Positions 30,401 to 54,400 of a DNA stretch of 64,000 nucleotides are shown here, piece by piece. The notes beneath the pieces were generated by a model. It was not told the origin of the DNA and ran no database searches. It saw only the letters and a program-made list of their open reading frames with translations. The position numbers and the translations under genes are program-made. Numbering within the stretch: the stretch's first letter is position 1; each line of letters begins with the position of its first letter. The stretch comes from Perna viridis (lineage: Eukaryota), in assembly GCA_037379345.1 (NCBI GenBank), contig CM074523.1, positions 30,953,678-31,017,677 of the forward strand. Direction: 5' to 3'.

Positions 30401-33400
30401 TAATTTCTTCTAATCCATTACATTAGAGACAAAATTTTAGAAATTGAAAGTATATAAATCTTAAGTTTGAAGATAGGGTTTAATTTTACTAGCATCTTAA
30501 ATTTATAGACCAAATTTTTCGAGGAGGGGGCAGTGTAACGTTGACATACTTTTTGCCATTCAACAGTTGGTTTAGGACGTCCTGTGACCTGGCAGTCAAA
30601 TGTGGCTGGCTCTCCTTCTATAGCATTGGTGTCACGGATCAAAGTTTTAAATTCTGGGGGTATATCTCTTTCAGTTTCTTCTTCTTCTGCAATAAATTCA
30701 TGCATACTCCATTAATATCACATTATCAATATTGATATCCTTGCTTAGAAGTACAAATGCATAAAAAACTAACAAAGAAAGACAACTAACTTATTTACAA
30801 CTTGCAAAAAACATAGACAAAGTACCATCCATTTGAAGAAAATTTATTAAAAAAAAAAACCAAAAACAGCAATACATATTTGCTTAATAGGACTGCATGG
30901 CATGTACTATTTAACAATCAAAATAAACTGGAAGTCCCATCAAATACTTCATTTCAGACAGTTTCTAAATTTACTTTAGACACTCAAAATTTCTTTAAAC
31001 ACTCTTGAATATTTTTCTCTAAGCCAAGAATTCAGTCACTTACCAACTACAGTGAGTTTGGCTTTACATTGTACAGTACCATACATGTTGTAAGCTTTAA
31101 CTGTGAACATTCCGGTATCTTCAGGGAACACCTCTGGAATACTGAGTGTGCTCACTGTCTCTGTCGTGGTGATCTGGAAGTCATGTGACGGCTGGATCTC
31201 AAAGTTGTCACGGTACCATGATATGATTGGTGGAGGGAATCCCTTGAAGTGAACCTCCAGTCTATAAATAGAAAAGCATTGAAAGTTAAAGAAACAATTT
31301 CAAACATAATAAGTTTGATATAAGTCAAAAACAACAACTGTCCATATATTGTGATAATCATTTAACTTTGACGTATAGCCTTTCACTTAGGCAAAAGGAT
31401 TTGACTAGCACTCAAAAGACATGATTTAGGAATGCCTGTCAAAAATTCCTGTCCATTATGTTAGAGTTTCTTTAGGCAAACTTCTTAATCATTTCCAGTA
31501 GTCTCTTTTCATTTTGAAGGATTTACAGCCAGTAAAATAGTTCAGGTAAAAGAAATGGTTTTCCTTTGATAGAATGAACTGGTAAATACAGGTAACTAGA
31601 TGACTGACAAGGAGATTTAAACATCCTATCAGACATAAATTCAAATATCTATGGAATAACCAAAAGTTTCAATCTCCTTGCCAATTTTCATTAAACAACC
31701 CATTCAATTAGGTAATGGTCATTCAATCATTCATCAGGTAATGGTCATAAGATCAACTCTATCCCTCTGAAGTTAATAATTCCAATAGTTGTAACACCAA
31801 ACACTTACGTGACAGGTTTTCCCTCAGTGACTCGTGAAGGTCTGAGAGGTTTGGTAAAGACTGGTGGTTCACGTCTCTCCAGTGTAATAAACGTCTCAGA
31901 GACCTTGGCCTCCTCTGGCTGTTGTTCAGGAATAACAGGAATAATCTTAGCCTTCTGTATGTCAATCTGTATCTCTGGGCGATCTGGTCTGATTGCCCGG
32001 GCAGCAGGCATGGGTGGAGCCTGTTTGTACTGGCTGGAGACACTGATGTACTCCGTTTTCATGATTTCTTTGTCATGTCTCATCTTAACTCTCGTTTCAG
32101 CAGCTGGAACAAGTAATAAGACAATGTAACTATGTTCAATTCTCTAAATTCAAATGTGCAAAATATTTGAAAACAGACCTATTGTATATTCCATTGCACT
32201 GATATTTTTTTTTATTATGGTGAGCATACAATATTAACAAAATACTATATAAGAGGTTATTTTCATGGTGCATTCAATTTATTATCCCCTCTTAACTTAA
32301 AAAATGCCTAAAATATTTTCTTCAGAGTATTTTTTTTTTGAAGACAAGTTGTATGAACACATCATCACTTTTGCATCATCATTCCATATTTTAAAAATCA
32401 TACTCCAACAGAAAATGTAAAATTTTATACATCATTTATTCTAACCTCTTTCTATCTGTTTCAGTTGGAACTCAGTAGCCCTGGGTTTCTCAAAAGCTTT
32501 CTGTAGCTCTGGTGTCCTGAGTTCAATCTTCTGTCTCCTCTCAAGCTCGATCTCAAGTTCTCCTAAAATCAGATAAATATAAAAATTGGAAAAATCTGAT
32601 AATTCACAAGTAAAATTGTGAGACACTCTTTTTCTATTTTCTTATATGATTTAAATTGATTTCAAATTATCCCACCCTTTGTGGTAATACAGGAAGGATA
32701 ATTCAAAAGGATTGTGCAAATATATATTGCAAAAGATTGGTCAGTTTAAAAAACTGATTCTAACTTAATATTCATTAAAATTCAGAAATTTTGATAAAAA
32801 ATAGAAAATATGTATACCTGCCCTGGGTATCATAATAAACTCTTAAATCTTCTTCAAATCCTTGAGTTTTCCTCAAATCTTCAGTTTAAGGTGATTTGAT
32901 TGATAGAATTTTAGTTGAGAAAGGATTTGAGGAAATCTCAGGGATGAAAACAGGCATTGAAGAACTAATCAAGGAAATATCAGGGATGAAAACAGGCATT
33001 GGAGAACTAATCAAGGAAATCTCAGGGATGAAAACAGGCATTGAAGAACTAATCAAGGAAATCTCAGGGATGAAAACAGGCATTGGAGAACTAATCAAGG
33101 AAATCTCAGGGATGAAAACAGGCATTGGAGAACTAATCAAGGAAATCTCAAGGATGAAAACAGCCATTGAGGAACTAATCAAGGAAATCTCAGAGATGAA
33201 AACATTGAAGAACTAATCAATCATATTTAGAAATTTTGAATTATAGAAAATGCAAAGGAAAAATGTTCTTCAAACAATCAGTTTTAATAGTGAACTGTAA
33301 ATTCATTAGAACATAAATGTTTCATTTTGGATGTTTTTTTACAAACAGTAATACTGTGTAACAGAATAGCAAATTACTAAGGTTTTAAATTAGGAGATCT

Positions 33401-36400
33401 CCCTCTCAAAAATGTTTTAGTTTTAGTTTTCACTACATGTTTTAACACAAATTGAAGTAATTTATTATGATTTAAAGCTGAAAATTCAAATAAGATAGGA
33501 AAAATTGCTGCAAATATAGCTAAATCAACCTTTCTGACACAGGCACATGAGCTGGATATTATTTAATTTTTCATGAAACATTAAGAAACTCCAGTGGAGA
33601 CTTTATGGAGTATCATACCTTTAGGAGCTTGTCTGAGTTTAGATCTCCAGTCATCCTTTGGTACAACAGTCAAGTTAGTGTAAGCCTCAGCTTCACCCTC
33701 AGAGTTCTTGGTAACGACTCTGACCTGTCCTGTCTCATACTCTCTCGTCTTCAGAATTGTCATGTAGTGCATCATACCATCGTAGCGCACCTTGTGTCTG
33801 GATCCCTGTAATATAATACGAACATCAGTAACCAGCAAAGACCAAAATATGCCAGAAATAAGTGCATGCAATTTTTTTTTTTTAAATTGCTATCAAACAA
33901 ACATAATCATTTTCCTGACTTCCTGGACGCAGAGGCCTGAATATGAATTCATTGTACAATTTTAATTATTCTAATTACATTTATGCAAAAAAAAGCAATA
34001 AAGAAATAAACACCTTTAAACATCATCCTATTTCTAATCAAATTTTAGATTTTATACTTACAGCAACAATTTGGGTTTCGTTGACCCACCATGTGACACG
34101 TGGACGTGGGTAGCCACTGACTTTGACCATGAATTTAGCCTGATCACCTTCCCCTACCTCGACTGGTTCTGGTTTGAGGTCAATGGAAGGAGGATACCTC
34201 CTCTTCTTTGGCTCTGTCATTTCCTGTTCATCAAGAATCATTGGACTGAAAAGAAAAAAAATATGCTTAGTGTTTATTTTCTGGCAATTGTTATACATTT
34301 TCTAATTTCTCTCCATTCTATATATCAAAACACATTTCAAACTACTTTTGCAACATCTACTCCTTTAAAATCTACAGGATTCCCATTTTCAAGGTTTAAG
34401 AAACCATAGATGAGAGAATTCTTAAGTCAGACAGAGATATCACAAAACAGGTGCAGATTCATAGATTTTTAAAAGAGGAAATTTTAAGGACAATATTAGC
34501 CCTTTTTGCCCAAATAAAGCACAAAATGGAATACTTTTTCTAACAAAGAGGGGTTCAACTGTTGGAAATCTTGCCCCCTGAATCCATCAAAACATTCTGT
34601 TTTTCCTTCAAATCTTTTTCTTACCTTCTCCAATGTTCTTCCATCTCCTGAAGTTTGATGGCTCCTTCTCCTGGTAACTGTGTATCAGATATTACAGCTC
34701 TCTTTCCTAAAATAAAATATAAGATCTTCTGTATGAAGTTTCTTTCCCCTAACTACAATACCTACCTTTTGTACCATATATTTGATATAATTTTAAAAGA
34801 TTTATTATTCCACTATATTTCATAGACATTTACATGTACAAACAAACAATTACATTTGATACTGTTCTACATGTATTTCCAATTGCACTTCTTTAATCAA
34901 TTTTTTTTTCTATTTGCATTTCTTCATGTTGTGTGTGTAAAGATCTGTATGCCCTAACCTTTAACCAAACTCACCTTTGACCTTGACCACACTGGTAACC
35001 TGGTCCTCCCCATACTGGTTGGTAGCTTTGCATGTGTAGGTTCCTGAATCTTCAGGGAACACATACTTGATATCGAGGACAACAAAGCCAAAGTCATATA
35101 AAGGCTTGAATCTGTGACCTAAAAAAATACAATGAACTTAATTGCATGTTTAATGAAAGCTGCAATAAAAGTAACATTACTATTCACAAGTACTGCCAAC
35201 TTGTAGTTACATGTAGATTCCCTATTCACAAGTACTGCCAACTTGTAGTTACATGTAGATTCCCTATTCACAAGTACTGCCAACTTGTAGTTACATGTAG
35301 CGATTCCCTATACACACAAGTACTGCTAACTTGTAGTTACATGTAGATTCCCTATTCACAAGTACTGCCAACTTGTAGTTACAAGTAGAGATTCCCTATT
35401 CACAAGTACTGCTAACTTGTATTTAAATGTAAAGATTCCCTATTCACAAGTACTGCCTACTTGTAGTTACATGTAGAGATTCCCTATTCACAAGTACTGC
35501 TTACTTGTAGTTACATGTAGAGATTCCCTATACACACAAGTACTGCCAACTTGTAGTTACATGTAGAGATTCCCTATTCACAAGTACTGCCAACAAATTT
35601 GTATGGTACTAACCATGATGTAATGGCTGCCCATCTTTGAACCATTCCACTTTCATGGTGGGATCTCCAAATGGTGCCAACTTGCACTCAAAGTGGGCTT
35701 TGTCATTTTCTTTGAGGTTTGTCAGGTCCTTTAATGCAGTCTTAAATTTGGGAGGACGAGCATGTTCCTTGTTGTACAAGTCCTCCTCAGCTGGTTGTTC
35801 ACCTTCACGACGAATGAATTCACGGACTGCGCTCTCTCTGTCCAAGTCCCTGAAAATTAAATAGAAATGATTGTTACAAAGATTCAGTACTGCTATTTTC
35901 AATCTTTTGCCCCCTTTTTCCCTAATAAACAAAAGAATGTAGGAATTAAACCAATGAAGATAATGTTTTATCAAGTACATCTCGCTTTCTTTTTCTTTTG
36001 AGGAGAGATGATCCCAAAGACACTAAAAAATCTGCTACCATAAAACTGAAAACTTTTTTAAAAAAGAACTGAAATTTAAATTTTTTTATTCACACACAAA
36101 TTTTGTTGACATGATTTCAGATATCAACACATGCAATAGCCAGACATGCATTAAATTGGTTAAGGAACAAATTGAGAAGGAACTCATCTGCCATTTCTAT
36201 GAATTACTGGTAAAATTGAACAGACAAGATTTACCAGAACACCAGGAACAGTAAAAAATAATCTCATATAAATGACTATTTTTTTATAAATAGACAAGAA
36301 AAAGGTTCAAAAGAACAAGATTCGGAAAATAAGTCAAGAATATTTAATCTGACATTATCTAACAGTATGATATTTAAAAGGTCATCTCCAACATCACTAG

Positions 36401-39400
36401 AAAGGTCAAGGTCAAGGTAACATGACATTACATGATGGAGGAAAAGTTCAGGTCACATAGTGAAATAGGAATATGGGTTACTTCAAATCAGACAGATTCT
36501 GACATTGTTTAGAAGTACATGTTCAGAATGAAATGAACTATGATTTTTCTGGGAGGATGCAAAAGTATTGATCAAATAGTCAAGGTAAAATGATGACCTT
36601 TGACCTATTGGTGGAATAATAGGAACACACTGTCCAAACCTGATGTGTAACTGTTTAATGGCTGGTGTTCTTATTCTAATCCGTCTCCTATTAAATGAAA
36701 ATCATGAGTTGATCTCAAGATAAAAACAAATAAAAACATACCAATTCATGTATTTATTGGACAGGTGATTCAAAAAGAGATATAGATGTGCAAAACATTA
36801 GAAAAATATAGAAATATTCAAAAAATATTGATGAGTGAAAATGATCAATAAATAAAAAGCAAATTAGTCATAAAACATTCAAAACATCACATGCTAAAAT
36901 AGAAATATAGTAACAAACAAATGAACAAATTTGAGGTTTATTTTTTATTTTATCAATGCATTGCATGTCAAAAACTGGTATCCATTGGTAAGAGATAACA
37001 AGAAGAGTTACATTGCAATGGTAACAGTGGTAACAAGTCATGGTAACCAATGGTAACAAGAAATGGTAACCAATGGTAACCAATTTTAACAAGACATGTT
37101 ACCATAAAAAGGTAACCAATGGTAACAAGACAAATTAAATCACACAGGTTTTTTTTTATATTCAAACAATGATTAGAAAAGCAACCTTGGGAACACAAGT
37201 TTTTTCTTAATCCTGAAATATATAAAGCCATGATTAATTGCAGACAAGAACATTAGTAAACAAGAACACATCTTAAATCGGTTTCATCATAAAACATAAT
37301 ATTCCTTTTATTTCACAGACAAGGAACTTGCATTCATAAAGCAAGAAAGTTCATAATCATCTCTGGCTGAAAATCACACACTCATTAAAACTTCAATACT
37401 TTGCATGTAACATACCAGACATAAACTGGTATAAAGCCAAGCAAGGAACCAAACACAATCTGGTTTACAGTCCTGAACAAAGCCAAACTGAAACCAGTCA
37501 CACAATCTAACCTTGACTGTTCTAGCCTAATTACAGCCTCACTGACGGTGTCAGTACTAGGTTTCCATGGTGATGCAAACACAGCTTCCAACATGATAAA
37601 ATCATCATGAGGATATGGACTCTGGACAATGGATTGTGTCCGTACTGGAATAGTCAGTTTTAGATCTTCCACTGGGATTACTAATTTAGAGGGCACAGTT
37701 GGGAACTTCTCATGAATGGTCCTTGTTGTGATATCAGTTTCATGGACACCTATGCCTGTTGGTTGGTCAGCAGGCAATGTTTTGGTTACAGGTTCTGAGG
37801 ATTTTGTTGGTTTTGGGGCAGGTATTGGCTTGGTTATTTTTTTCTCTGCCAAAACCATTCCTTTTTGTAAAGGCCCTGGGAATGATTGTATTGTTTTCTC
37901 TGTTTTGACTGTCACTTTCTTCTCCTTTTCTTCTAATGGACTGCCTTTTCCTGGTACTGTGACAGTAGTCTGGTAAGTCTGATCAATTGGCTGACCAGGA
38001 CTGCCGTAAGCTGTGACAGTAGTAGTCTTATCTATTTCAGTTTCTCTTACCCACGGTGGATAATCTTGGGGCTTATGTTCATCACCAACTGTTGTTTTAA
38101 CAGTTGTTTCAAATTTCTTGGGAGCAGATTTCCAAACCTTTTTTTCAGCAGTAACAGTGGTCTTTTTATCCACCTCTGTGTCTTTCATCCATGGTGGCAT
38201 AGCAACCTGTGGCTTTTTGGTTGGCACTGGCTTTTTAGGTGCCTCTGGTTTTTTCTTCACTGTTATTGAAGTTTGGTAAGTCTCGTCACTTGGTTGAGGC
38301 ACCTGGCGACCCTCAGCTGTGACTGTTGTTGTGTGTTCGCATTCTGTTTTTTTCATCCATGGTGGATAGTCTAATTTGGGTTGTTTCATCTTGTTGTCAG
38401 GTTTTCTTGGTACAGTCATTGATGTTTCATATTTTTTGTCCGGTTGTTTTTTAGGTGGTTTAGCTTTTCTCATTGAGTCAAGCTCATCCTCAGATACCAG
38501 ACGCAGGTGCCCAGATTCAGTTTCTGAGGCGTAATTAATTTCTTGGACTGGTCCGACTGGCTCTATCTCATACCTGAAGTAAAATCTGTTTGTATAATAC
38601 CAGTAACATGTACGAGTGCTATAAAAATGTTAGTTTCATTAGCACTTTGCAGTTAATTGCAAATATCCATTTTTTATAAAGTTTCACCTATACTGTTGTC
38701 AACACTGCAATTTTATACCAATAGCCAAAATTTGATATGTTGAATAGAAAATGTAATATTTTAATGCATTTTGAAAATCATACCCTTATAGAACTTTTTC
38801 ATGATAGAACCAAAAAATACAGTGACACCTGTCTAATCTGAACACTTTTTAGTTGTTTTTTCTTTTTTCCAGTTTAGTCACAAAACTAGGGACCAACTTT
38901 TCATGATGTCTGTTTTCGAAAGCTGACTGGTTTATTCAGGGTATAGTTAAGACAGGTTTAACTGTAAAAGAAGGGGAAATGAGATTTGATATATATGAAT
39001 AAAATAAAAATTTAAGGATTTTTCAAAGCAAAGTTCAGAAAGCAGCAGCATTGCAATTCTAAGCAAATGGGAGAAGCAGCCTTCCCAGAATGCAAAGCAT
39101 ATAATCAAAGGGGAATAACCTTGGAGGACTGCCTGGTTCTACTGGTTTCTTTCCAGGCTTCAGAGGTTTTACACCAGTCTGATCCGGTTTCTTATCTACT
39201 AATACTGATGTTTCATAGGTCTGGTCTGGTTGTTTAGGGACATGTCTGCCCTCTGTTGTATACTTTGTGGTAGTTGTTTCTTCATAGTCAGTTTCTCTGA
39301 CCCATGGAGTTAGTCCTTCCTCAGGCTGTTTCCTCAGATCTGATGGTTTCACACCAACAGTAATGGAGGTTTCATCAGTCTCATCCATTGTTTGTTCAGG

Positions 39401-42400
39401 ACCTTGACCCCTCTGTTGTTCAATAGAGGTCATGGTCTTATCTACAAGTTTGGCCTTAACCCAAGGTGGGAAGGTCAACTGTGGGGGACCAGTTTCATCA
39501 TCTGGTTTTGTGTCTACAGACATGGATGTCTCAAATGTCTTGTCTGATGGCTGAGGTATTTGGCGACCTTCAGCAGTCATTGTAGTGTTTTGTTCCCACT
39601 GTGTCTCCCTGGTCCATGGTGGATAAAATTGTTCTGGTTGTGGTATGTCCTTCTCAACCTTTTTGTCAACTGAAATTCTGGTTTCATATTTTTGAACAGT
39701 TGTCGTAGGTTTATCTGGAGAGTGTGGTTTCCTTTCTTCCTCAGGAACGAGACGTAGATATCCTGATTCAGTTTCTGAGGCATATGTTATTTGCTGGACA
39801 GGTCCTTCTTCTTCTATTTCATATCTAAAGTTAAAAAGTTTACTCATTCAAGGGATACTTACTTCATACCGAGTGTAATGTGTAATTAATAAGAAGTATT
39901 TGTATTACATCATTTTATTTATGAAATCAGATTCCTTTCAAAAGAGAAAAAAATTGTTTTCAGAACATAATCTTTAAGGTAAACTTTTTTTTTTATAATA
40001 AAGAAGATTAAAATACTATCTTGATTTTCATATCATTTGCATTATCATAAAATGTTTATGCCTATAAAATTTTCAAAGGGGAATAACCTTGGAGGACTGC
40101 CTGGTTCTACTGGTTTCTTTCCAGGCTTCAGAGGTTTTACACCAGTCTGATCTGGTGTCTTATCTACTAATACTGATGTTTCATAGGTCTGGTCTGGTTG
40201 TTTAGGGACATGTCTGCCCTCTGTTGTATACTTTGTGGTAGTTGTGTCTTCATAGTCAGTTTCTCTGACCCATGGAGTTAGTCCTTCCTCAGGCTGTTTC
40301 CTCAGATCTGATGGTTTCACACCAACAGTAATGGAGGTTTCATCAGTCTCATCCAGTGGTTGTTCAGGACCTTGACCCCTCTGTTGTTCAATAGAGGTCA
40401 TGGTCTTATCTACAAGTTTGGCCTTAACCCAAGGTGGGAAGGTCAACTGTGGGGGACCAGTTTCATCATCTGGTTTTGTGTCTACAGATATGGATGTCTC
40501 AAATGTCTGGTCTGATGGCTGAGGAATTTGGCGACCTTCAGCAGTCATTGTAGTTTTTTGTTCCCACTGTGTCTCCCTGGTCCATGGTGGATAAAATTGT
40601 TCTGGTTGTGGTATGTCCTTCTCAACCTTTTTGTCAACTGAAATTCTGGTTTCATATTTTTTAACAGTTTTTGGTGGTTTATCTGTAGAACTTGGTCTCC
40701 TATCTTCCTCTGGGACAAGACGTAAATATCCTGATTCAGTTTCAGAGGCATATGTTATCTCCTGAACTGGTCCTTCTTCTTCTATTTCATATCTATAGCA
40801 AAATTAATTGTTTTAAATGTATTGATATGCCATTATCTTGGTACTTGCGTACACTTCCTTGATATGTCATTATCTTGATACTTGCAAACATTTCATTTTA
40901 CACATTTATCAGAAGATTTTTTTATTTCTTTATTTAAAATCATAATAATTTTATCTAAATAATATTAATTTATTAATTTATCATTTCTTATCTAAATTCA
41001 TTGCAATTTAAAGATAGAAGATTTTTCACATTTATAGTAAATCTATGGCAATAACCTAGGAGGACTGCCAGGTTGAACTGGTGGTTTCCTGTCTGGCTTC
41101 TTTTCTTCCGATGTCACAGATGTTGTTTGTTGCCAATCTGTTTCCTTCACCCAGGGTGGATATTGGGAACCAGGCTGCTGTTTTGTCTCAACTGGCTTTC
41201 TGGCCACTAAAACTGATGACTCGTAAATCTGATCTGGTTGTTTAGGGACATGTCTGCCCTCAGTTGTGAATTCTGTGGTAGTTCTTTCTTCATATTCAGT
41301 TTCCCTGACCCATGGAGGTAGTCCTTCATCTGGCTGTTTCTTCAAGTCTGAGGGTTTCACACTAATTGTCATAGACGTCTCATGTGTTTCATCTACAGGT
41401 CTTTCTGGTGTTCTTCTTTCTTCAGTCACTGTAGTTGTCTGTGTGACCTCAGTGTCCTTGACCCATGGTGGGAATGTCACTTTTGGTTTCTTATCTTTAG
41501 TTGGTTGCTTACTTACAATATTTGTGTAAGATGGCTTTTCTGGACTTCTCCTCTCCTCTACCACTGTTCTTGTTTGTGTGACCTCAGTGCCCTTGGCCCA
41601 GGGTGGGAATGACCCTTTAGCTTTTTTCTTTTCAGCTTCATCTGGCTTCAGTGGCTTTTGACCTTTCTGTTGTTCAACAGCCTTATCTACAAGCTTTGCC
41701 TTGACCCAAGGTGGAAAGGTCAACTGTGGGGGACCAGTCTCATCATCTGTCACTGTTGTTTCATACACCTGATCAGGAGGACCCTCTCCTGTAATAGTTG
41801 TTTTCTTTTCATATTCAGTTTCTGTTACCCAAGGTAGATAACTGTCTTTTGATTTTACAGGCTTGTCTTCTGTTTTTTTGTTTACTGTTACTTCAGATAT
41901 GTAGGTCTGGTCTGGTTTTGGCTGTTGTCCTGTTGATGACTTCTTGGGTGTGTCCAGTTCATCTTCTGATACAAAGCGTAGATATCCAGATTCAGTTTCA
42001 GAAGCATAGTTGATCTCCTGTACTGGACCTACAGGTTCTATTTGATAGCTGTAGAAAATCATAATAATGGTTCTACACTTATGAAGTCAAGTTTTCTTTT
42101 AAACCTAAAATTTCAAGTTTTGCTAATCACCAAAATTAATTTTTTTTTATTAACTAAGATATTATTTATTTTCCTTATCATGAAAAACTGATTGTCAAAC
42201 ATTAATTTTTTTGAAGTAGGAATATGAAATTTAATATTTTTTTTTAAAGTTATATTACAACTAAAATATTTATCTTTTCCTAAATAGTTATATCTAAACT
42301 TATATAAGTAAATCATGGTTTCAATATAAAGATAAATCAATGTCAATAACCTTGGTGGGCTTCCAGGTTTTACTGGTGCTTTCTGAGTTGATTTCTTCGA

Positions 42401-45400
42401 TGGCTGTTTCTGTTTTGAAACTGGTTTCCTTTCCACTGAAACTGATGTTTCATAAATCTGATCTGGTTGTTTAGGGACATGTCTGCCCTCAGTTGTATAT
42501 TCTGTAGTAGTTCTTTCTTCATATTCAGTTTCCCTGACCCATGGAGGTAATCCTTCATCTGGCTGTTTCTTCAGGTCTGAGGGTTTCACACTAATTGTCA
42601 TAGAGGTCTCATGTGTTTCATCTACAGGTCTTTCTGGTGTTTTTCTTTCTTCAGTCACTGTAGTTGTCTGTGTGACCTCAGTGTCCTTGACCCATGGTGG
42701 GAATGTCACTTTTGGTTTCTTATCTTTAGGTGGTTGCTTAGAGACAGGTTGCTTATATACAGCAAATTTGTCCATTGGCTTTTCTGGTGTTTTCCTTTCT
42801 TCAGTCACTGTAGTCCTTTGTGCAACCTCAGCGTCCTTGACCCAAGGTGGGAAGGTCACTTTTGGCTCTTTTGTATCCTTTGTAGGTTGTTTAGCAACAG
42901 AAACAGATTTTTTATACATTATATCATAAGGTCCTTTCAAATCCTTTGTTATTGATGTTGTTTGTTTTTCAGTTGTGTCCTTGACCCAGGGAAGGGATTC
43001 ATATTCAGGTTTATAGTCTGGTTGACCTTGACCTTGAACAACCATTGTGGTCTCATAGGTCTGATCAACAGGCCTTTCCCCATACTGTTGACCAGTAATG
43101 GTAACAGAATGGGTAACAGTTGTATCCTGAACCCAGCCAGAATAAGCACCCTGAATGGGTTGTCTCCCTTGGTCTTCTGGTGAAATTATTGACACTTCAT
43201 AGGTTTTATCAAAGGGTTTTGGACCTTTCACCTCTTTGGTAATGACAGTTCTATTATCAATTTCTGTGTCCCATGATAAAGGTTTATCCTGTTTAGGTTT
43301 TTGTTTGTTGTCTTCTGGTTTTTTTGTTACAGACACAGAAGTTTGGTAAGTTTTGTCTTCTGTAGTTTCTGGTGGCTTTTGTTCACCAGTGACAGTTACT
43401 GACTGGTCAACTGTTGTTTCCCTAGTAACCAACCAAGGAGGATAACTCTTTTTGCTAAAATTGGAGTATACATGGTGAGCAAATCTATCTACTGGTGAAA
43501 TGTAATGAAATCATTTGCCATTTATTTAGTAGTTAAAGCCATGAAATTAAAATATAGTTTATTTTTTAATAAATAAACATGCTATCTTGACTAAAATAAA
43601 ATCCAGAATATGTTTGTAAAGGGAGGTAATCCTATGGGAGATGATTCCCATTCACTGTTCCTTAATTTCAATTTTGGTAATGGCAAGTAATTTCATTGCT
43701 TTAGGAAGCAAAGGGAAACAAATATCAGATATTAAACAAAATTTTTAAAGGTAAGAAAAACTTATATGATTTCTAACTACGGTAAACAGTGTACATGCCT
43801 TGCAAAATGAAAAATAGATTGACTTAAATTAAACTAAATTGATAGTAACTATTCTAAAAATTATCTCAAAACATGCTTAAGGAGGTAGACCTAAGGTAAG
43901 GGACATAACTCTTGATTTCAGTGATACGTTTGTATCATATTCAATTTCACTTAAGCTTTTCAAGCTTTCCACTGAAACTGAATGAAATCAGTCAGTTACT
44001 TTGATGCTTACATGAGATTAATGTAAAATGCTAATACAAACATTCCAATGATTAGTAAGAGTCATCTCCCTTACCCTAGGTCTATCTCATTAAAATAAAC
44101 AGAAAAAAGACCAAATTATCCTCTATTAACACTGACAATGAAGGTAACAGTTTTCCTAATTGAAAAGAAATATTACAACAAAGGGACATAACCACAACAA
44201 AGGGAAATAACTCAGACCTTGGTACACTCTCCTTGGGTGGAGATGGCTTCTTGGCTTTCTTTTTCTCTCTTGGTGACAGTGGTTTGTTATACCTATTATA
44301 TTAGTTAGAGAAAAGAAGAAAGTAAGATACTAACTACAATATATACACAGAGATTTAATATATCAACTCATCTTATGCCACTACATTCAAACACAGTAAT
44401 GATGATAAAAAATTATGTGTTAAGTCAAAAACTATTTTCTAATTATTAAGTATATATTGAAAAAAGACTTTTCTAACTCTGTTTTTCATGCAAAAAGACT
44501 AATGAGTTCTAACAACATTTTCCTTATTTAAGAATATTTTATGACAATCAAAACAGTGTTCAAACCAATCTAAACTTTAAATGTTTGTATCTAGGGAGAC
44601 AATTCTTTAAAAAAAGGGTAAGACAGGGGAGGTAATTCACCTGAATTGTTCATATTTGGTCTGCAGTGAGATAGGAATCTGTGGTTGATATGGAGGCTTT
44701 AGATCATCATATCTGAAAAGTTTTACAATTCTAAGACTGTTTGTCCTGATAAAATAATTATTGAAACCTATAACACATTTAGGCCTTAAAATCAGAAGTA
44801 ATGACTTTCATACTGCAAAATGGTCTTAGATTTCACTTTAGACCATACTAGAAAGGGTGTAAAAAAATTTATTCTTAAAGCAAGACAGAAAATGACCTGA
44901 TACAGAAAACTAATCCAGACAAATACCCATCATACAGTCTACAAAGAATAATTAAATTAAAACTTATATTCAACAAAACATAAGAATTAACTAGAATATA
45001 TCAGTGAGTTCTATTTCATTTTCTATCCATGCCTTGAAAAAATATTGTGTTTTTTAATCCTATTCATTATCCATGCCAGTCTATGTTTTAGACTATGCCT
45101 ACCTTCCAGCCTCATCATCAGTAGAATGAACAAGCCTTAGTGTGGCCTTCTCGGTGTCAGAGACATAATGTATTTCCTGGACTGGACCAGTTTCCTGGAT
45201 CTCATAATGACTGTAAAGCATTATGGGAAGGTCAACACAAAGTACATTGAGTTATATTTAGTTTAAGGCAGAAATATCTTTTTTTCTAAGACAAGGATTT
45301 TTCTGCATGTAAAAGATTTTAAAGAAAATTCTAAGATATCTCTGCAGATTAAATGAAAAAAAATCACAACTGTCAAAATTTTCATTCATGTATTTTGTCT

Positions 45401-48400
45401 TTATAGAAGTCCAACTTCAAGATTATAGAATAAAAGAACATAACTTCACCAGAGCATTCCAATTAGTAGCACTATTTAGGAACATGCCATTGTAATACTG
45501 TTTAAAGGACTATTACTGTATCACAGAAAATTACAAAAAAATTGTTTCAGGACTAATAATATTCATGCCACTACAACAAATCCATCAAATCATCTCCAAT
45601 CAAAACCTTAAGAAAAAGAATAACAGCAAATGGGACACTCAAAATATTATGTGAAATTATGTTGTGATCTTCCAAGCAAGGTATTAGGAAAACAAAACTA
45701 TGGTAAAAAATATGATGAAAAGCAGCAATCTGCAAATCAAAACAGGATTGAAATCAGAAAATTTATAAAATAAAGAGAGACAACCTCAAAATAAATTTCA
45801 CTGCAACAGGTACCAATTCCAATCAGTTTCACAAAGGTAAGGACCATTCCAAAGTCAGTATCACTGCAATAGGAGTCATTTCAAAACAGTCACTACAACA
45901 GGGATCTTTTCAAGACACATTTCCTCATGGGTATATTTTCAAACAAATTCACTGCAATGGGGACTTTATCAAACAACTCAATTCTGACCTATCAGAGTCA
46001 GTGTGACTGGAAGGCGGCTGTATTCTCACCACTGCCTTAGGTTTGTAAGACACCGGAGGCCCAGTTGTGGGCTTCTTCAAAACTGGTTTAGGTTTAGTTT
46101 CTGGAGGCAAAGAGGCAGCCTTGCTTTGCCTAGTTTCCAAAATAATTTCTTGCCTTTTTGTCACCTTGACAGGTTTAGGGGCAAGTTTAGGCATCTTAGG
46201 GGTCTCCAAAAACAGTTTCTTCTCAGTCTTGTGAGTAATTCTGGAATGTTTCAATATAGTGATAAAAAACAGTGTCAATATGAGGGATTCCAACTACAAC
46301 ATATTGACATCCATTTAAAGCTTTATTATAATGTGTTACTACTTTGTTAATCATTTCCGCTACAACTACATTAGTGAAGAAACCTTTTTTTTCCTCATCA
46401 ATAACAGACATTCTTAGCTTTACAACATAGATAATCAGATTTAAAGGCTATTCAGTTAATGCCATTCAAAGTTATTTTCTTGGATTTAAAGACTATTCAG
46501 TTAAGGCCATTCAAAGTTATTTTCTTGGTTTTAAAAGGACATTTTTCATCTCTTGTCCAATGTTTAATGTCATATCAACAAATAAGAAAACAAAAAAGCA
46601 CCTTATTCATCAAAATGTTTGTAAAAAGCGTCCACAAGATGGGGGTCAGTAAAGGGGTAAAAACAATTTGCCTCAATTGTTTTCATTTAAAAAAGGCTGG
46701 AGAACTAACTTTAATTAGCCTTAGTCAGAGACTTCCATGCAAATTGACTCAATTTCACCCAGTTGCATATTTATCAGTGCTAGAATTTGTGTCTACTTTG
46801 TTCATTCAAAGTGGTTCTAACTTTCTAATTTTAACTTAGAATGGTCTTAGTTAGTGTCAGCCATGCTTAACAAATATATCAATAGAAAGTAGAATATGAA
46901 CCTTTCATCCTCAGGGTAATGTTGACCATCTGGTATAGATCTCTGTAGATCTACAGGCCTATTGTAATACAAACAAGTACATATGATTGGATTGAATTGA
47001 ATAAAATTCAATGTTCTGTTTTTCAAATTAATGAATATTAAGAGCTTATTAATTTATAGCAATTTGAATTGAACTGTTTTCACTTTAAATTTATATTTTA
47101 TTTTTCTCATTAAGAATCCTAGATTTATATTGAAAGTAGTACCAGCTATATTCAAATTGCAATAACCACATAAAATAATCGTTAGCAAGGTGGAGAGACA
47201 GAGCCTATATTAGTATATAGGGATAAACAAAAATTCTGGGTCTCCTCTATTATTCAAAATAATGAATTTTAAAAACTTGGTAGTTTGATAACTGCTAAAA
47301 AATAGGAATTTCTGCAAGCCTGAAAGAGAAAGCCTATGATAATATAATTGAATCAACAACAAAACCCAGAAATTCATATTATTACAAAATGTAACCATTT
47401 CAAGAACCACAACTCTTCTGAAATCCTGGAACTAAAATATGTTGGACTATTAAAAGCTGTACAGTTCAGCTTTTTCCTGAATTGTTAACTTTAAATTAAC
47501 ATCAGAGGTGCAACTATCATCAATTGTTTGTTTTTAAAATATTCATTACAAGGTAGAGCATTACTGATACAAAAATTTAAAAATGTTGCCTCCATATATG
47601 TACACCTGTCTTAAAGATAACAAAGAATCTCTCCACTTTATTTAACCATGCAACAACAATAAGGGTGGGGAATACCATGCAGAATCCCACCTTTGTTTCT
47701 CAAGGTCATCTTCTGACACCAGACGGAGATATCCTGACTCTGTGTCAGAGGCATAGCTGATTTGCTGGACTGGTCCTTCTTGCTCTATCTCATAACTATG
47801 AATAGGTACAATGAATAAATTGTAGGGAACTAAACTAGCAAAAAGCTGTCCTAACATTACTCCCTATACTAGAAAACCATGAATGGGTACTACATGTCAA
47901 ATAGCACCCGGGTTAATTAGGCCAAGGAAAAAAATGTCTGCTTAAGGTTACATTGGATGAAAAATAGGGCAGGTAGGTACGAGTAGGTAAAATCTTTTTA
48001 TTTTTATTATTATTTTCATAGGCACTTATGGGAAGATTTCTTGACTAATTAGAAGTTAACTAAAAAATGATTGTTTACCATCATTTCATAAAAAAATACC
48101 AAGAAAATGTGCTAGGGTAGGCAGGGTAATATTAAACAGACATGGCCTTATCAACAAACACACATAAGAATATTCATCACTATATTATTCAAATATTATG
48201 AAATACTTCAGATAAATATCAAATGTCTACTTTTAAGCTATTTGCCACAATTGCTACCATATTTCAAAATACACTACAGAAAATTTAACATCATCATGCA
48301 TGATATTTTCTTACTCAATTATCAAAACAAAATCTATTGGCAATTTTGCAAAGCATTTATAATGCATTTTGGAAAACAATCACATTATCCAAGCATGCAT

Positions 48401-51400
48401 TATGGGTAATAACCTTGGTGGAGATGGCTGTTTAACTCTTCTCTTGGCTGGTTTCTCTTGAGGAGCAGAAGGCTTCCACTTCTGAACTGGTTTCTTTTCA
48501 GGAATCAGTTGTTCTTCTGAAACTGGTTTTCTTTCTGCTGGTTTCTTAACAGGGGCTGGTTTCTGTGGTGGACCAACCTTTCTAGGTGTGTCAAGCTCAT
48601 CCTCAGATACCAGACGCAGGTACCCAGATTCAGTTTCTGAGGCATAACTAATTTCTTGAACTGGACCAACTGGCTCAATTTCATAACTGAAGTTAAACAT
48701 ATATCCACTCAAGTCTTGTTTTAAAATTGAACTCATCATCTGAGAAAGTTCTTTTGATGAAGAAATCTAGTTATTAAAGCAGACTAACTACATGTGAAAA
48801 AGTAGGTCCCAGAAGTCGCAAATTTTAAGGAGTCCAAAATGTTTGAACCTCCAGATTTGGTTACTATATTAGTCAAAAGGTCTATCAAGGTACTAACTGC
48901 ACCTTCTCCAAATTTCATATCTATTAACAACTCTGAGGATGAAAATATGTAGAAATGGATTCTGTACATTTTTCAGTACATAAAAGGCCTAATGATGCAG
49001 TAACAGCCCTTCTTTTTTCAAATTTTAGATCTATAGCCCTGAGGAAGAAAAATGGATGAAAATAGACGATGTTTTCAGCATGCAGACAAAAATAGATAAT
49101 AACCTAGGAGGACTTCCTGGCTTAACAGGGGCCTTCCTCTTTGATGGCTTCTGTTGAGGCATTTTAGGTGGCATTTTAGGCCCTGGTTTCTGAACAGGTG
49201 GAGCTCTTGATGGTGGAATACCTTCCTCTGGAACCTCAAATGCTCTCCTAGCATCTGAAACTGACTGTGGTAACATTTCCTCCTCAACTTCCATTGGCTG
49301 TTCTTGCTCAGTGGGAGGAGCTTGTGGTCTTGGGACCCAAGTGGGTGGAGCTTGTTCAGGCTGTTGTTTAGCTCCAAGTCTAAAGGGGGATATCAAGGTA
49401 GTTTAATGGCAATTATATTTGTTTACCTTTTCAATCTACATTATTCACATTGGGTAAGTGAGAGACCATTTGAAATGAAAGTAAGAAAATAAAATAAAAA
49501 AAAGCACAAAATCATTTTTCAACTGCAACAGTAATTTAATCTTTTTCTTTCAATTCAATCCATCAATGTTCAAGTAAATACATACATTTATAAATCCTCG
49601 TGCAATCAAAACAGTCAAAATCAAAATGGCATAAAACACAAAAATAAAACAGCAAACTCATTTTAACGTTCATAATTATTCATCCATGTAGATTTAATTA
49701 CCTCCCTTTTTGAAGTACCAGAAGACCATACTAAAACCTTTTGTCAATTTCAAACTTTCATTTAATTATTTCAGAAAAAAATCCTGACAAAATGTACATT
49801 AAATTCTTCCAAAGCTAACCTTCTTCTCTTCGGTATTGGTGAAGATTCAGCCGACAATGTGGCTGGTGTCGGTGGTGGTGGTCTAGGTGGCGCTATCTGC
49901 TCAGAAGGTTTTTTAGATAGAGCAGTTTCCATTGGCTCCTCAACATCGCTTAACATTCTAATAAAATTTGTTGATTTATTGTTCAAATTTCAATTCAACT
50001 AAAATGTAAATACCTAAAATCTTCTGAATTGTAAAGAAAGGACTCTTATTGAAAATGTGTCACTTTAACCTTTAACCTTTAACATTTAAAAATAATTTGA
50101 AAATTAATTTGCTTTTTCCCCATCAGAACAAATCACATATTCTAAAAGTTATAACTTTAATAAAATTTATTCCAATAAAAAATTCAGAAAATAAATCAGT
50201 TTATGATTATCAAACAAAATACTTCTGTTAGGTTCTCTAAGCAACATGACAAAGTGTGAAGGTTCTTTAATCTTATTTTAATGTGAATCTATGCATTCAA
50301 TACTAATGTCCAACTAGCTTTGTTTAATAAGTGGCAAATCCAAATAATAGCCTTAACCCCCCATATTTTCTGGACCCCTACCCTTTTCAAATCTCTGGAT
50401 CCGCCTATGTTTCTACACTAAAGATTATTTCTCTACATGGAGTTAAAACTAAAAGAATCAAAATAGACACCACAAGACAACATGCATTGCAATCCACACA
50501 CACTTTTCATTTTGTTTAAAAGTATTTCAAAATTTCACACTTATTATCAATTTTTTATCACCTGTATACATGGCCCAAAAAAAAACAAAGAATTGGAAGT
50601 AAATCTATAATCCTAATAGTAAATATCAGTAAAAGTTCCACTTTAAAGTAGCAGAAAACCATGAATTGTATTAGATCTTCAAGAATCCCTGCTAAAGATT
50701 TTTTTCACTCCATTTGAAAGTAAAATGTCTTAGTGATCAGAATGTAAAATGTGAATTTATAATCTATCAAAACTTGACAAGTACGAAATGTATAAATGTA
50801 ACTCTTTCAAGAGGAGCTCAACAACTGACAAAACAAACACACTGATCACATGGTAAACAACAACAAAACTTTGGGAAAACTCAGGATCTTTCAGTCTCCC
50901 AAGAGAAACTAAACTAGCTATTCACACAAGTTAAACTAAACAAAACAACCAAAACTCAGATTTGAACATGCAAGTCAAAAACATTGCAGACGACAAATAA
51001 AAATCAACTGGGTTCCAGATCATGCTAAGGAAGAATAGTAACCTCCTAGCCTCATCCTCAGGAACCAGTCTAAGTGTACCACTAGCGCCCTCTGTTGAGT
51101 ATGATATCTGCTGTACAAAGCCCTCTTGTTGGATATTATAGTGTCTAAAGAGAGGAAGAAAGGGAGACAAATAAGAACAGAAATATGGATGACGGCATTT
51201 TTTCAATTATGGTACATAAGTTTTTGTCAATCACAGCCAGCCAGGGTTTGACAGAGAATATCATATATCATGTACAGTGTTGCCTATCTAAAACCCCTTT
51301 TTGACTGAAGTGTTTGTCTGTGCAGGGATTTCAAAAGATGTCTGCTTTAGGCAGAAAACAGTTTATTCAGGGTTCAGTTGAGACAGGTTTCACTGTAAAG

Positions 51401-54400
51401 GTAAGTCAATTGACATCCCACTTGATTACACCATAACTTTAGTTATCATTGTTCAACATTCAAAGTCACTCATCATAAATAAGAAAACTCTACATTAATT
51501 AAAAAGAATAAATTCAGTCTATAGTTTTAAAGTATTCCACTTTTATTTTACAAATGAAGAAAATCTAGGTCACTCCTGCACAATTTTCCTACTGGGAATT
51601 CATTGTGTAGGAAAGGGAAACATGGTATTATGCTCTTACACATAATGACATTTCCACTGGGAAAAATAACCAGATCCACTGGGATCCTCCATCAATAGGA
51701 AAAATGACCAAGCTACTTCAGAGATCAAACAAATATAGACCACCCTCCTTTTCTCCATGATCTCTAAATAAGCCTGGAAAACAATAAAATGTCTAACTTA
51801 CGGTGGTGATTCAGTCCTTGGTGTCGTCTGCTGTGGTTTAGGAGTAGGTCTAAGAACCACAGGTTTAGGAGCTGGCTCTGGAACCTCCTTTACGGGGGAG
51901 ACCTGCTTCTTCTGGATCGTGATCTTCTTCTTTGGTTCTGGTTTCTTGGCCTCAGCTTGAAGAACAAACAATAAACCTCTCAATACATGTATGTTGCACA
52001 ATGTATATTATTTTATTTGGAGTTGATGAGAGTACAAGGTCTACAACCAGTCTTTTAAAAAGTGACCTTTAGAATAAGACTATAGAAATGTGTTACAAAA
52101 GATATATGCCTACAGACTAAAGTAAAACTTAATTCCAATGTTAGAGGGTAAAACTCCCAAAGAATCATTAGCAAAATATCATTATGGAAGATACATGTAC
52201 AAATACTTACGTTTAACAGAGAGTTTGCCTCTGGTAGAAGCTGTGCCAGCAACATTAGCAGCAGAACATTGAAACCATGCAGAGTCAAATGGCTGAACTG
52301 CATCAATGGTCAATGTAGACCTGCCACCCTCTGTCTCAATTCTGTAAGGTTTGTTAGGAACCAACATTTTGCCATCTTTCTGCCAGCTGATCATTGGCTG
52401 TGGTATACCAATCACCTGACATCTCAGAGCAACAGGTTGTCCTTCACGGATGTTGAAGTTCTGGATTCTCTCAACGAATCTTGGTGGTTGCATCTGTTCT
52501 TTCTCTGTTAAAATTGATTAAGATTTTAAAATGCTATGCATTTTACAAGGATAAACAGAAATTAAAAATTCTGTATAGGATGTATTACATTTAGTAAAGT
52601 ACACAAATCTCATGGAAATCCAGCAAGTAATACAGGGCGAGTTTGGGACAAGATAATATCCCCAGGAAATCCAACAAGTAATACAGGGCGAATTTGGGAC
52701 AAGATAATATCCCCAGGAAATCCAGCAAGTAATACAGGGCGAGTTTGGGACAAGATAATATCCCCAGGAAATCCAGCAAGTAATACAGGGCGAGTTTGGG
52801 ACAAGATAATATTCCCAGGAAATCCAACAAGTAATACAGGGCGAGTTTGGGACAAGATAATATCCCCAGGAAACCTTTTTTTTGTTTGTGGGGAAAAAAG
52901 AATAATCTTAGTCATTAGTTTCTGTACCCAGTATTTTAAGTTCCAGAGTGAATGAATTCTCTCCAGCTTTGTTCTTGGCCAGACAGGTGTAGTGTCCAGC
53001 ATCATTTCTGGAGGCAGCCAAAATAATAAGGGAGTTAACTCCATCCTCATTTACCACAATCTGTAAAAGGAAAATATAAATGTCTTTATAAAAATAACAT
53101 GCTTAAACAAAGATCCACACTGCATCATAAATCAATGTTTAACATGTAACTCCATATTTGTTAATGCTTTTAAATTATAAGGAGGCCACTTCAGAAAGAT
53201 ATTTTTCATCACAGATGTTAAAAATTTCCAAAGACAAGTCCATTTTGGGTGAATGATAATAGTAGAACCTAAATACTTTTTTATATTATTATGAACCTAA
53301 ACAGTACACGTTCAGGGGTTGAATGTCAGAAACTAAGAGTATTGCCCTCTGACTTAGGGTCAAACCTTACCTTGTGTTGGTCATCATTATGAACCTGAAC
53401 ATCATCTCTGAACCATGTCAGTTCTGGGACAGGACGTCCAGATACTAGGGTATCAAATCTAACAGTGTTGCCCTCACGGACCTCACGGTCTTCAGGGACT
53501 TTCTTGAACAGTGGTCTAGACAAGGCCTCCATGATTCCACCTTCTTCTTCTGGGGCTTTCTGCTTGTCTGTTTGGTCACTGAAAGAGAGAGACAGACAAT
53601 TTCTCATTAAATTAATAGAGAAAATTAGCTGATATATTAACCATTCAAACATTAAACTATTTACAAGTTTTTTTTTTCAAAGGCTTTTTCATTATACATA
53701 AGAAAAAGTATTTCACATAACTGGAATCCTGTTCTCCTGAAAAAATATTGATTTGATACAGTTGAACTGAGTAATCTCCTTCTTCAACCTTATTTCACTA
53801 GAGAAAGACATACATTTTTTTACTGAACTCATTTTCTTTTCAAAGTCTTCAACATTCCCTTGCTACTTGGAAACAAATTAGAGTTGTGTCCCTTTAAAAA
53901 ATATAGAATTATCAAATATTACACTTACACTCCAAGAATTTTGTCCAATGCTTCCTTTCCAACGAATGAAGTGGAATCAATATTTCCAACACTATCTACA
54001 TAGAGCTCACTAGAGCAAGTGTCTTTTCCAGCAGAATTAACAGCCAGGACGGTATAATGTCCAGCGTCCTCTGGTAGTGCCATCCTAATACGGAGAGTAC
54101 AATAGCCATCTTTGGTGTATTTCATCTCATAACGGCTGGTACGTTTGATCCTTTGGCCATTTCTATACCATGCAACCTTAGGTCGTGGTCTTCCTGTGAT
54201 GCGGCACACAAATGTGGCATCAGATCCTTCCATAAGTCTAAAGTCTTTAAGTGTTTGCACTATTTTTGGTGGTGCAGGAGCACTGGGTTGTAATCTGTCT
54301 GTTGTGACATCAGATTCATACTCAGATGTTTCTGTCTCACTTGAGAACTTGATTCGGCCATCCTTATAGAATTGTTTTTCCATCAGTGACTGCTCAAATC

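What the first reader, a model, noticed from the sequence alone, without database searches (positions are those of the whole stretch)
37512..51144. Repeated ~33-aa exon-initial motif YEIEPVGPVQEISYASETESGYLRLVSEDE in eight cassette exons
Seen: the motif starts directly at the acceptor in C1, C4, C5, C8, C12, C13, C14 and C15, and three short exons (102-108 nt) consist of almost nothing else. Divergent copies keep Y.I...G.VQ.I.Y...E...LRLV...(D/E), which suggests selection on the protein sequence. Established: vertebrate titin uses alternatively spliced Z-repeats that bind alpha-actinin. Inference: this is an unrelated, splice-titrated ligand-binding module with alternating hydrophobic residues, perhaps beta-strand forming. 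I cannot assign it to a known family.
Basis: partly seen in the sequence, partly recalled or inferred. Interest (0 to 1): 0.82.

Follow-up and report, generated by a model that had tools for sequence, protein, structure and literature searches.

The report
Conserved hairpin mini-exon module in bivalve titin
Eight exons in the front part of a bivalve titin gene each begin with the same ~30-residue peptide, which selection has kept at the protein level, which other species also carry, and which matches no described family; it is probably a small beta-hairpin docking site, but its partner and its splicing pattern are untested.

Summary
There are exactly eight copies, all on the minus strand and all at a splice acceptor. 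They score 59-75 bits against the motif profile; the next best match scores 6. These are the only copies in the 723-Mb genome.

All eight exons are multiples of 3 nt with the same intron phase at both ends. Three are motif-only mini-exons of 102, 105 and 108 nt.

Selection acts on the protein. Synonymous sites between copies are saturated while amino acids are kept (codon-position identity 0.78/0.84/0.41). Orthologue dN/dS is 0.03-0.08.

A profile search of 1.84 billion proteins found about 45 relatives, nearly all short genomic ORFs from unnamed species with the same exon boundaries. Four foreign contigs keep the same exon order. Pfam, PDB sequences, Foldseek, the ESM Atlas and the literature give no known family.

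AlphaFold2 predicts a beta-hairpin, with pLDDT 84-87 in the core.

The host gene is a titin/connectin. The array lies among Ig domains downstream of spectrin-repeat exons that resemble CCDC141/Zormin.

The scan has only first-reader notes on this same stretch, and nothing on other DNA.

The parts
52211..52493 (-). I-set Ig exon just upstream of the array. Its best donor is AAAC|GTAAGT, phase 1. The 5' end given here is only the ORF start, not a mapped acceptor.
   Evidence: Pfam I-set E=1.6e-22; donor and phase; orthologous exon is about 61% identical by tblastx in L023 and also present in L020
51802..51955 (-). Adapter exon C0, 154 nt, Pro/Lys-rich, ending ..SPP+CC. It takes a phase-1 intron at its 5' end and leaves a phase-2 intron at its 3' end, so it sets the phase used by all the cassettes.
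   Evidence: Acceptor and donor phases; its donor region is conserved in L020 and L023
51043..51144 (-). C1: motif-only mini-exon, 102 nt, of the H-Y entry class
   Evidence: 59 bits; C1-type relatives P0040 and P0047; C1-like exon after the orthologous Ig exon in L020 and L023
49104..49379 (-). C3: Pro-rich cassette without the motif, ending PGSPP+AG. It is the upstream splice partner of C4.
   Evidence: conserved in L013, L020 and L023; in L022 the C3-like exon is fused in frame to the motif
48414..48686 (-). C4: motif followed by a Pro/Lys-rich tail ending PSPP+AG, 273 nt
   Evidence: 70 bits; similarity to L013 runs 48689..48395 and stops near the exon borders
47691..47795 (-). C5: motif-only mini-exon, 105 nt
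   Evidence: 75 bits; orthologue in L009, dN/dS 0.05
45103..45210 (-). C8: motif-only mini-exon, 108 nt, H-Y entry class, a divergent copy
   Evidence: 68 bits; 89% identical relatives P0014 and P0026
41056..42048 (-). C12: motif followed by Trp-centred PPWV(K/R)ETE units and a PGSPP+AG tail, 993 nt
   Evidence: 62 bits
40088..40792 (-). C13: motif, Trp-centred units and PGSPP+AG tail, 705 nt; tandem duplicate of C14
   Evidence: 66 bits; C13/C14 dS 0.57, dN 0.03
39120..39824 (-). C14: motif, Trp-centred units and PGSPP+AG tail, 705 nt
   Evidence: 67 bits; P0012 is a near-identical ORF in the public collection
37512..38573 (-). C15: motif plus a long tail, 1062 nt if the donor CAAG|GTTAGA at 37512 is the one used. 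This 3' end is the least certain boundary.
   Evidence: 64 bits
35612..35849 (-). First exon after the array: a linker plus the start of an I-set Ig domain. Its acceptor ttttcag|G takes a phase-2 intron, the same phase as every cassette donor. The 3' end is not mapped.
   Evidence: phase; Pfam I-set E=3.2e-6

Best explanation
Shown:
- The eight copies are translated, exon-initial copies of a previously undescribed peptide module of about 30 residues. The pattern is (H)Y-E-I-[QE]-x-x-G-P-V-Q-x-I-x-Y-[AV]-S-[DE]-T-E-x-G-x-L-R-L-V followed by an acidic tail.
- They lie in the N-terminal Ig region of a bivalve titin/connectin gene.
- Each copy opens an exon whose two flanking introns have the same phase. 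An adapter exon (C0) sets that phase, and the first exon after the array accepts it, so any subset of the cassettes could be joined without a frameshift.
- Whichever cassette lies upstream, the motif would be preceded by ..SPP plus one residue, because the mapped upstream exons (C0, C3, C4 and C11-C14) end that way. The three motif-only mini-exons and C15 end differently.

Inferred:
- The module is a short beta-hairpin that folds on binding. It sits between disordered proline-rich and Trp-unit spacers and serves as a docking site for a sarcomeric partner, most simply by beta-strand addition to an Ig-type or PDZ-type domain.
- The number of docking sites per titin molecule is set by how many of the eight exons are included.
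- The partner is unknown.
For: The copies are real and specific:
- Eight copies at 59-75 bits against 6 bits for the next best segment.
- These are the only copies in the genome.

The exon structure is regular:
- 8 of 8 have an AG acceptor with a pyrimidine tract, an AG|GT donor and a length divisible by 3.
- The phase chain runs Ig exon (phase 1), C0 (1 to 2), cassettes (2 to 2), next exon (2).

Selection is on the protein:
- Across all 28 paralogue pairs, pS is 0.76 and pN 0.19.
- Codon-position identity is 0.78/0.84/0.41.
- Orthologue dN/dS is 0.08, 0.03 and 0.05.

Cross-species evidence:
- 57 hits among 1.84 billion representatives. About 45 are true; nearly all are short genomic ORFs in which the motif starts at an acceptor-like site, and most end about 33 residues later at AG|GT.
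- DNA similarity to foreign contigs stops near the exon borders.
- L020 and L023 keep the order Ig exon, C1-like, C3-like, C4-like. L009 keeps C4-, C5- and C7-like.
- L022 has the C3-like tail and the motif fused in one exon, a natural confirmation of the reading frame.

Structure:
- AlphaFold2 with 47 sequences gives a hairpin, strands 12-16 and 21-25, with pLDDT 84-87 in the centre.

Context:
- I-set Ig exons lie on both sides.
- Spectrin-repeat exons lie upstream. This fits the SESTD1-CCDC141-titin / CG15822-Zormin-Sls arrangement described in PMC12198301.
Against:
- No partner was identified. The own-genome search found the motif in no other gene, so there is no clue from shared use.
- The hairpin is a 14-residue element in a 38-residue model with mean pLDDT 74 and pTM 0.34.
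- A natural three-copy ORF from another species (P0009) folded to nothing (pLDDT 44, shallow alignment).
- No annotated giant protein appeared among the hits. I cannot tell whether public gene models include these exons or whether such proteins are simply missing from the library.
Confidence: 0.5

Rival explanations
1. The motif is a mechanical element rather than a docking site. The hairpins of several copies, in one molecule or in neighbouring titins, pair into a small beta sheet. This would shorten or cross-link the spring region and open under load as a sacrificial bond.
For: There are several copies per molecule, separated by disordered spacers, in a spring-like region next to PEVK-like exons. 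A hairpin with exposed edges is predicted. In another lineage three copies sit 45-60 residues apart within one exon (P0009).
Against: AlphaFold2 on the natural three-copy ORF shows no packing of the copies (pLDDT 44), although the alignment was shallow. The invariant Gly, Gln and Tyr and the conserved acidic tail are more typical of a recognition surface than of a generic strand.
Confidence: 0.2
2. The motif is a regulatory or modification site. It could be a phospho-regulated SUMO-interaction-type or degron-type linear motif (psi-x-psi-psi followed by Ser and acidic residues, with CK2-type sites S-E-T-E and S-E-D-E) that controls titin turnover or signalling.
For: The L-R-L-V-S-E-D-E stretch read from the sequence fits, from my own knowledge of published SIM consensus patterns, a hydrophobic core plus an acidic or phospho-Ser tail. 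The setting is disordered.
Against: The most conserved positions (G8, V10, Q11, I13, Y2, I4, Y15) lie outside that stretch. The acidic tail is replaced by K-S-E-K in the P0009/P0052 lineage, and L-R-L-K variants exist. A simple linear motif would not need about 26 constrained residues.
Confidence: 0.1
3. The conservation serves RNA rather than protein, for example an exon-definition, enhancer or selector sequence. Alternatively the exons are untranslated pseudo-exons or a domesticated repeat.
For: The motif always sits at the acceptor, where splicing enhancers act. The cassette donors are a shared non-consensus AG|GTTATT.
Against: Third codon positions are nearly randomised (identity 0.41) while first and second positions are kept (0.78, 0.84). 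dS is saturated with dN/dS of 0.2 or less. All exons have open frames and matching phase. The only copies in the genome are in this gene. One species has an in-frame natural fusion.
Confidence: 0.03

Closest known systems
Vertebrate titin Z-repeats (Pfam Titin_Z, alpha-actinin-binding, alternatively spliced)
   Same: A short peptide module repeated between Ig domains in the N-terminal part of a titin gene, with each copy on its own exon or at an exon start, so copy number could in principle be set by splicing.
   Different: There is no sequence relationship (no Pfam hit at E<=1). The module is about 30 residues rather than about 45. It is predicted as a beta-hairpin, whereas Z-repeats are helical when bound. 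It lies after at least ten Ig domains rather than after the third. Alpha-actinin binding is untested.
PEVK / PPAK and invertebrate PEVK-like spring repeats of titin, Sls and I-connectin
   Same: Same gene class and neighbourhood. The cassette exons are phase-symmetric and rich in P, E, V, K and T, and the cassette tails resemble such spacers.
   Different: The motif itself is not low-complexity. It has about 10 invariant or near-invariant positions and a predicted fold. It gives no Pfam PPAK hit.
Beta-strand-addition ligands of filamin Ig domains or of PDZ domains (internal beta-finger ligands)
   Same: A short peptide with alternating hydrophobic residues and a predicted hairpin, in a Z-disc-proximal titin region. 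In Drosophila the filamin C-terminal Ig domains are proposed to bind titin/Kettin at the Z-disc (PMC5521747).
   Different: This is a functional analogy only. The paper does not map a peptide site of this kind.
Drosophila Zormin-Sls and human CCDC141-titin head region ('connectitin', Hanashima 2025)
   Same: Spectrin-repeat exons are followed on the same strand by Ig exons and then by spring exons, the arrangement described in PMC12198301.
   Different: That paper reports no motif of this kind. Whether the spectrin exons belong to the same transcript here is untested. The single spectrin hit is below Pfam's cut-off (24.2 bits against 29.9).

Membership tests
Titin Z-repeat (Pfam Titin_Z) | Sequence match to the Z-repeat profile | tested here: not met
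   hmmscan of six cassette exons against Pfam-A at E<=1 gave no Titin_Z hit. The only hit was a chance APC_u14 match at E=0.049.
Titin Z-repeat (Pfam Titin_Z) | Helical peptide of about 45 residues that binds the alpha-actinin EF-hand 3-4 domain | tested here: not met
   The module is about 30 residues and AlphaFold2 predicts two strands with no helix in the core. Binding itself cannot be tested with these tools.
PEVK / PPAK repeat | Match to the PPAK profile and low-complexity P/E/V/K composition | tested here: not met
   No Pfam hit. The motif has defined invariant positions G, V, Q, I, Y, L and R.
I-set immunoglobulin domain (as a fragment) | Match to the I-set profile | tested here: not met
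   The cassette exons give no I-set hit at E<=1, while flanking exons give E=1e-13 to 1e-31.
Titin/connectin-type giant muscle protein (host gene) | Long array of I-set Ig domains with interspersed P/E/V/K/T-rich spring exons on one strand | tested here: met
   I-set hits on eight exons across the window and three more upstream. There are E/V/T/K/P-rich ORFs of 1158 and 456 aa that end in Ig domains and a 1352-aa one downstream.
Titin/connectin-type giant muscle protein (host gene) | Upstream spectrin-repeat (CCDC141/Zormin-like) unit, as in the 'connectitin' arrangement | tested here: inconclusive
   Coiled-coil exons lie upstream. One gives Pfam Spectrin at E=4.9e-5 but scores 24.2 bits, below the 29.9 cut-off. 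Continuity of the transcript was not tested.
Titin/connectin-type giant muscle protein (host gene) | FN3 rod and kinase domain at the 3' end | not tested
   This is stated only in an earlier unchecked note of the scan (s1-755832) for DNA 122 kb below the window.
Known short linear motif classes (SUMO-interaction motif, LC8 TQT, LIR) | Consensus residues kept in all copies and binding to the cognate domain | not testable with these tools
   By eye only. The aromatic residue an LIR would need is not conserved (Y/T/H/S). The residue after the invariant Q is E or Q, not T or V as in LC8 sites. The psi-x-psi-psi plus acidic stretch is kept in most lineages but not all.

The most novel reading that the evidence does not exclude
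The motif would be the founding member of an undescribed family of beta-hairpin docking mini-exons in invertebrate titins. It would be a functional counterpart of vertebrate Z-repeats that arose independently: the number of anchoring sites per titin would be set by exon choice in different muscle types (for example striated, smooth or catch adductor). Relatives would exist beyond bivalves, such as the three-copy ORF P0009 from a marine-biofilm metagenome and the 2123-aa ORF P0045.
Probability: 0.3. Interest if true: 0.7.

Novelty: new variant of a known kind. Interest (0 to 1): 0.5.

Why it matters
How invertebrate titins are anchored and tuned is poorly known outside flies and worms, and mollusc muscles cover an unusual functional range: fast striated, smooth and catch.

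This is a strongly constrained, repeatable 30-residue module whose copy number could be set exon by exon. That gives a concrete handle:
- one peptide to use as bait for the partner;
- one antibody epitope to place this part of titin in the sarcomere;
- eight exons whose inclusion can be counted across muscles.

It also shows that conserved coding mini-exons of about 100 nt lie in titin introns, where automated annotation may skip them.

Tried and rejected
- Pfam on six cassette exons: nothing.
- PDB sequence search with the profile: only a chance 12-residue match to a chondroitinase, E=1.9.
- ESM Atlas: no usable hit.
- Foldseek of the hairpin model against PDB: nothing below E=4, as expected for so small a model.
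- Literal search of papers for motif strings: no paper. Literature searches on mollusc and annelid titin gave only the 'connectitin' synteny paper and a fly filamin paper as context.
- Naming the taxa of the foreign hits failed: cluster look-ups and contig look-ups carry no organism names. The one sample I could trace is a marine-biofilm metagenome.
- P0045 has no named relatives.
- AlphaFold2 on the three-copy ORF P0009 was uninformative, pLDDT 44.
- Rejected as false or convergent hits of the profile: P0041 and P0048 (repetitive ORFs), and P0037, P0055, P0060 and P0063 (Gly-rich prokaryote-type repeats).
- Rejected: a ninth degenerate copy in the C15 tail. It is not detected by the HMM.
- Every search and fold was done exon by exon or on natural uninterrupted ORFs.
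Full report
**1. What is there**

The window carries one very large minus-strand gene.
- I-set immunoglobulin exons lie at 52-63 kb and at 17-36 kb (Pfam E=1e-13 to 1e-31).
- Giant E/V/T/K/P-rich exons that end in Ig domains lie at 13.0-16.5 kb and 8.3-9.7 kb.

- A regex on six-frame translations finds eight motif copies, all on the minus strand.
- A profile HMM built from 47 aligned copies scores them at 59-75 bits. The next best segment in the 64 kb scores 6 bits.
- A six-frame search of the whole 723-Mb assembly finds only these eight.

So the repeat is real, far beyond chance, and confined to this gene.

**2. Exon anatomy**

For all eight copies:
- the Tyr codon lies 1 nt after an AG preceded by a pyrimidine tract (1 nt plus a His codon in C1 and C8);
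- the frame stays open to an AG|GT donor;
- the exon length is a multiple of three.

| Exon | Length (nt) | Content |
|---|---|---|
| C1 | 102 | motif only |
| C5 | 105 | motif only |
| C8 | 108 | motif only |
| C4 | 273 | motif plus Pro/Lys tail |
| C12 | 993 | motif plus Trp-centred units |
| C13, C14 | 705 each | motif plus Trp-centred units |
| C15 | 1062 | motif plus long tail |

The introns on both sides split a codon after its second base. The upstream Ig exon, however, ends in a consensus phase-1 donor, AAAC|GTAAGT. This is resolved by a 154-nt Pro/Lys-rich exon at 51955-51802 that I call C0.
- Its acceptor takes a phase-1 intron and its donor, CACC|GTAAGT, leaves phase 2.
- Its donor region is conserved in two other species.
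- The first exon after the array (acceptor ttttcag|G at 35849) also takes phase 2.

Hence any subset of cassettes can be joined in frame. That is a necessary condition for cassette use, not proof of it.

Because C0, C3, C4 and C11-C14 end in ..SPP plus two bases, the motif would be preceded by SPP-x when one of these is the upstream exon.

**3. Selection**

Among the eight paralogues:

| Measure | Value |
|---|---|
| Mean pairwise identity, codon positions 1 / 2 / 3 | 0.78 / 0.84 / 0.41 |
| pS, all 28 pairs pooled | 0.76 |
| pN, all 28 pairs pooled | 0.19 |
| pN among the six core copies | 0.03-0.14 (synonymous sites mostly saturated) |

Orthologous comparisons with two foreign contigs:

| Pair | dN/dS |
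|---|---|
| C4 vs L013 | 0.08 |
| C4 vs L009 | 0.03 |
| C5 vs L009 | 0.05 |

This rules out recent duplication, gene conversion alone, or an RNA-level constraint as the cause of the similarity.

**4. Relatives**

An hmmsearch of the 11-sequence profile against 1.84 billion cluster representatives gave 57 hits at E<=0.001.
- About 45 are convincing. Nearly all are short ORFs called on genomic contigs of unnamed organisms.
- In nearly all of them the motif is preceded by an acceptor-like translation (..S|Y or ..SH|Y), and in most it ends about 33 residues later at R|F/L/W-V, which is AG|GT. The motif-only mini-exon with both boundaries is therefore the common form.
- Copies sort by type: C8-type at 89% identity, C1-type at 70-74% and C5-type up to 96%. 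This suggests old paralogues that keep their positional identity.

Foreign contigs keep the local order:
- L013: C3-like then C4-like.
- L009: C4-, C5- and C7-like.
- L020 and L023: the orthologous Ig exon, then a C1-like mini-exon, a C3-like exon and a C4-like motif.

DNA similarity stops near the exon borders. For example, the match to L013 spans window 48689..48395 for exon 48686..48414. In L022 the C3-like tail and the motif lie in one uninterrupted exon, which confirms the reading frame across that junction.

More distant forms exist:
- P0009 has three copies spaced 45-60 residues apart inside one ORF. Its contig comes from a marine-biofilm metagenome.
- P0045 is a 2123-aa ORF with four weak copies and other repeats. 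It has no named relatives.

I could not name any of the source organisms. Earlier unchecked notes of this scan call the genome a bivalve.

**5. Known families**

Nothing matches.
- Pfam.
- PDB sequences.
- ESM Atlas.
- Foldseek.
- Literal motif strings in 8.4 million papers.

The motif is not a Z-repeat, a PPAK/PEVK unit or an Ig fragment.

**6. Structure**

AlphaFold2 with the 47-sequence alignment predicts a hairpin.
- The strands are residues 12-16 and 21-25 of the 38-residue query, roughly E-I-S-Y-A and S-G-Y-L-R.
- pLDDT is 84-87 in the central 20 residues; the mean is 74 and pTM is 0.34.

This fits the alternating pattern of the conserved residues. The natural three-copy ORF gave no confident structure (pLDDT 44 with nine sequences). 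Self-association is therefore neither supported nor excluded.

**7. Place in the protein**

Upstream of the window, on the same strand, further Ig exons are preceded by coiled-coil exons. One gives a sub-threshold Pfam Spectrin hit.

This is the SESTD1-CCDC141-titin / CG15822-Zormin-Sls arrangement described by Hanashima et al. 2025 (PMC12198301). It places the array in the N-terminal part of the titin, presumably near the Z-disc, after at least ten Ig domains. An earlier unchecked note places the FN3 rod of the same gene 122 kb further down.

**8. Reading**

Shown:
- a new, strongly constrained, exon-initial peptide module;
- its phase-compatible exon architecture;
- its conservation in other species.

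Inferred (about 0.5): it is a hairpin docking site that folds on binding, and its number per molecule is set by exon inclusion.

Rivals:
- a self-pairing mechanical element (0.2);
- a modification or SUMO-type regulatory motif (0.1);
- an RNA-level or non-coding explanation (0.03, largely refuted).

**9. Limits**

- No annotated giant protein appeared among the profile hits, so I cannot say whether public gene models contain these exons.

Noticed in passing
window 51802-51955 (-): A 154-nt Pro/Lys-rich exon (C0) lies between the Ig exon and C1. It converts intron phase 1 to phase 2. Without it, no cassette would be in frame with the upstream Ig exon. Its donor region is conserved in L020 and L023.
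   Followed up: yes
L015 7344-9999 (-) and L017 480-7140 (-), i.e. 7-20 kb upstream of the window: Coiled-coil, spectrin-repeat-like exons lie on the same strand ahead of the Ig exons (one Pfam Spectrin hit, E=4.9e-5, below the cut-off). This looks like the CCDC141/Zormin-like head of the 'connectitin' arrangement in PMC12198301.
   Followed up: partly
window 49104, 48414, 42351, 41056, 40088, 39120 (cassette 3' ends, -): Six cassettes end in (P/Q)-(G/P)-S-P-P plus AG and share the non-consensus donor AG|GTTATT. After splicing, five of the six read PGSPP(R/S), which when the junction residue is Arg fits a PxxPxR class II SH3-ligand pattern. The shared weak donor may matter for regulated inclusion.
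   Followed up: no
window 48590-48685 vs 38477-38572 (-): The C4 and C15 motifs are 91% identical in DNA (dS 0.35) although 10 kb apart, closer than most other pairs. The C4 orthologue in L013 shares the C15-type residues N13 and H22. This could be gene conversion or retained ancestral states.
   Followed up: no
P0037, P0055, P0060, P0063 (profile hits): These are Gly-rich prokaryote-type proteins with 5-6 repeats of V-Q-R-I-T-Y-A-T-D-T-A-T-A-S-x-R-G. The repeat resembles the motif core V-Q-x-I-x-Y-A-S-D/E-T-E. They have no Pfam family. The resemblance is probably convergent, but it may offer a structural analogue of the hairpin.
   Followed up: partly
P0045 (2123-aa ORF on a 55.9-kb ENA contig, no DNA available): A giant single ORF with units of about 350 aa containing W-K-P-T-P-F, plus four weak copies of the motif. 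Its only relative is one 85%-identical ORF. It has no name and no Pfam family.
   Followed up: partly
window 52591-53050 (-), 32886-33216 (both strands); L015 47-574; L023 3-335: Tandem minisatellites inside introns of the titin gene show up as repeated peptides in the ORF lists. A similar one lies next to the orthologous Ig exon in L023.
   Followed up: no
window 37512-37620 (-): The C15 tail (..F-A-S-P-W-K-P-S-T-D-T-V-S-E-A-V-I-R-L-E..) looks by eye like a broken second half of the motif, and it carries a W-K-P element also seen in P0045. The HMM does not detect it.
   Followed up: partly
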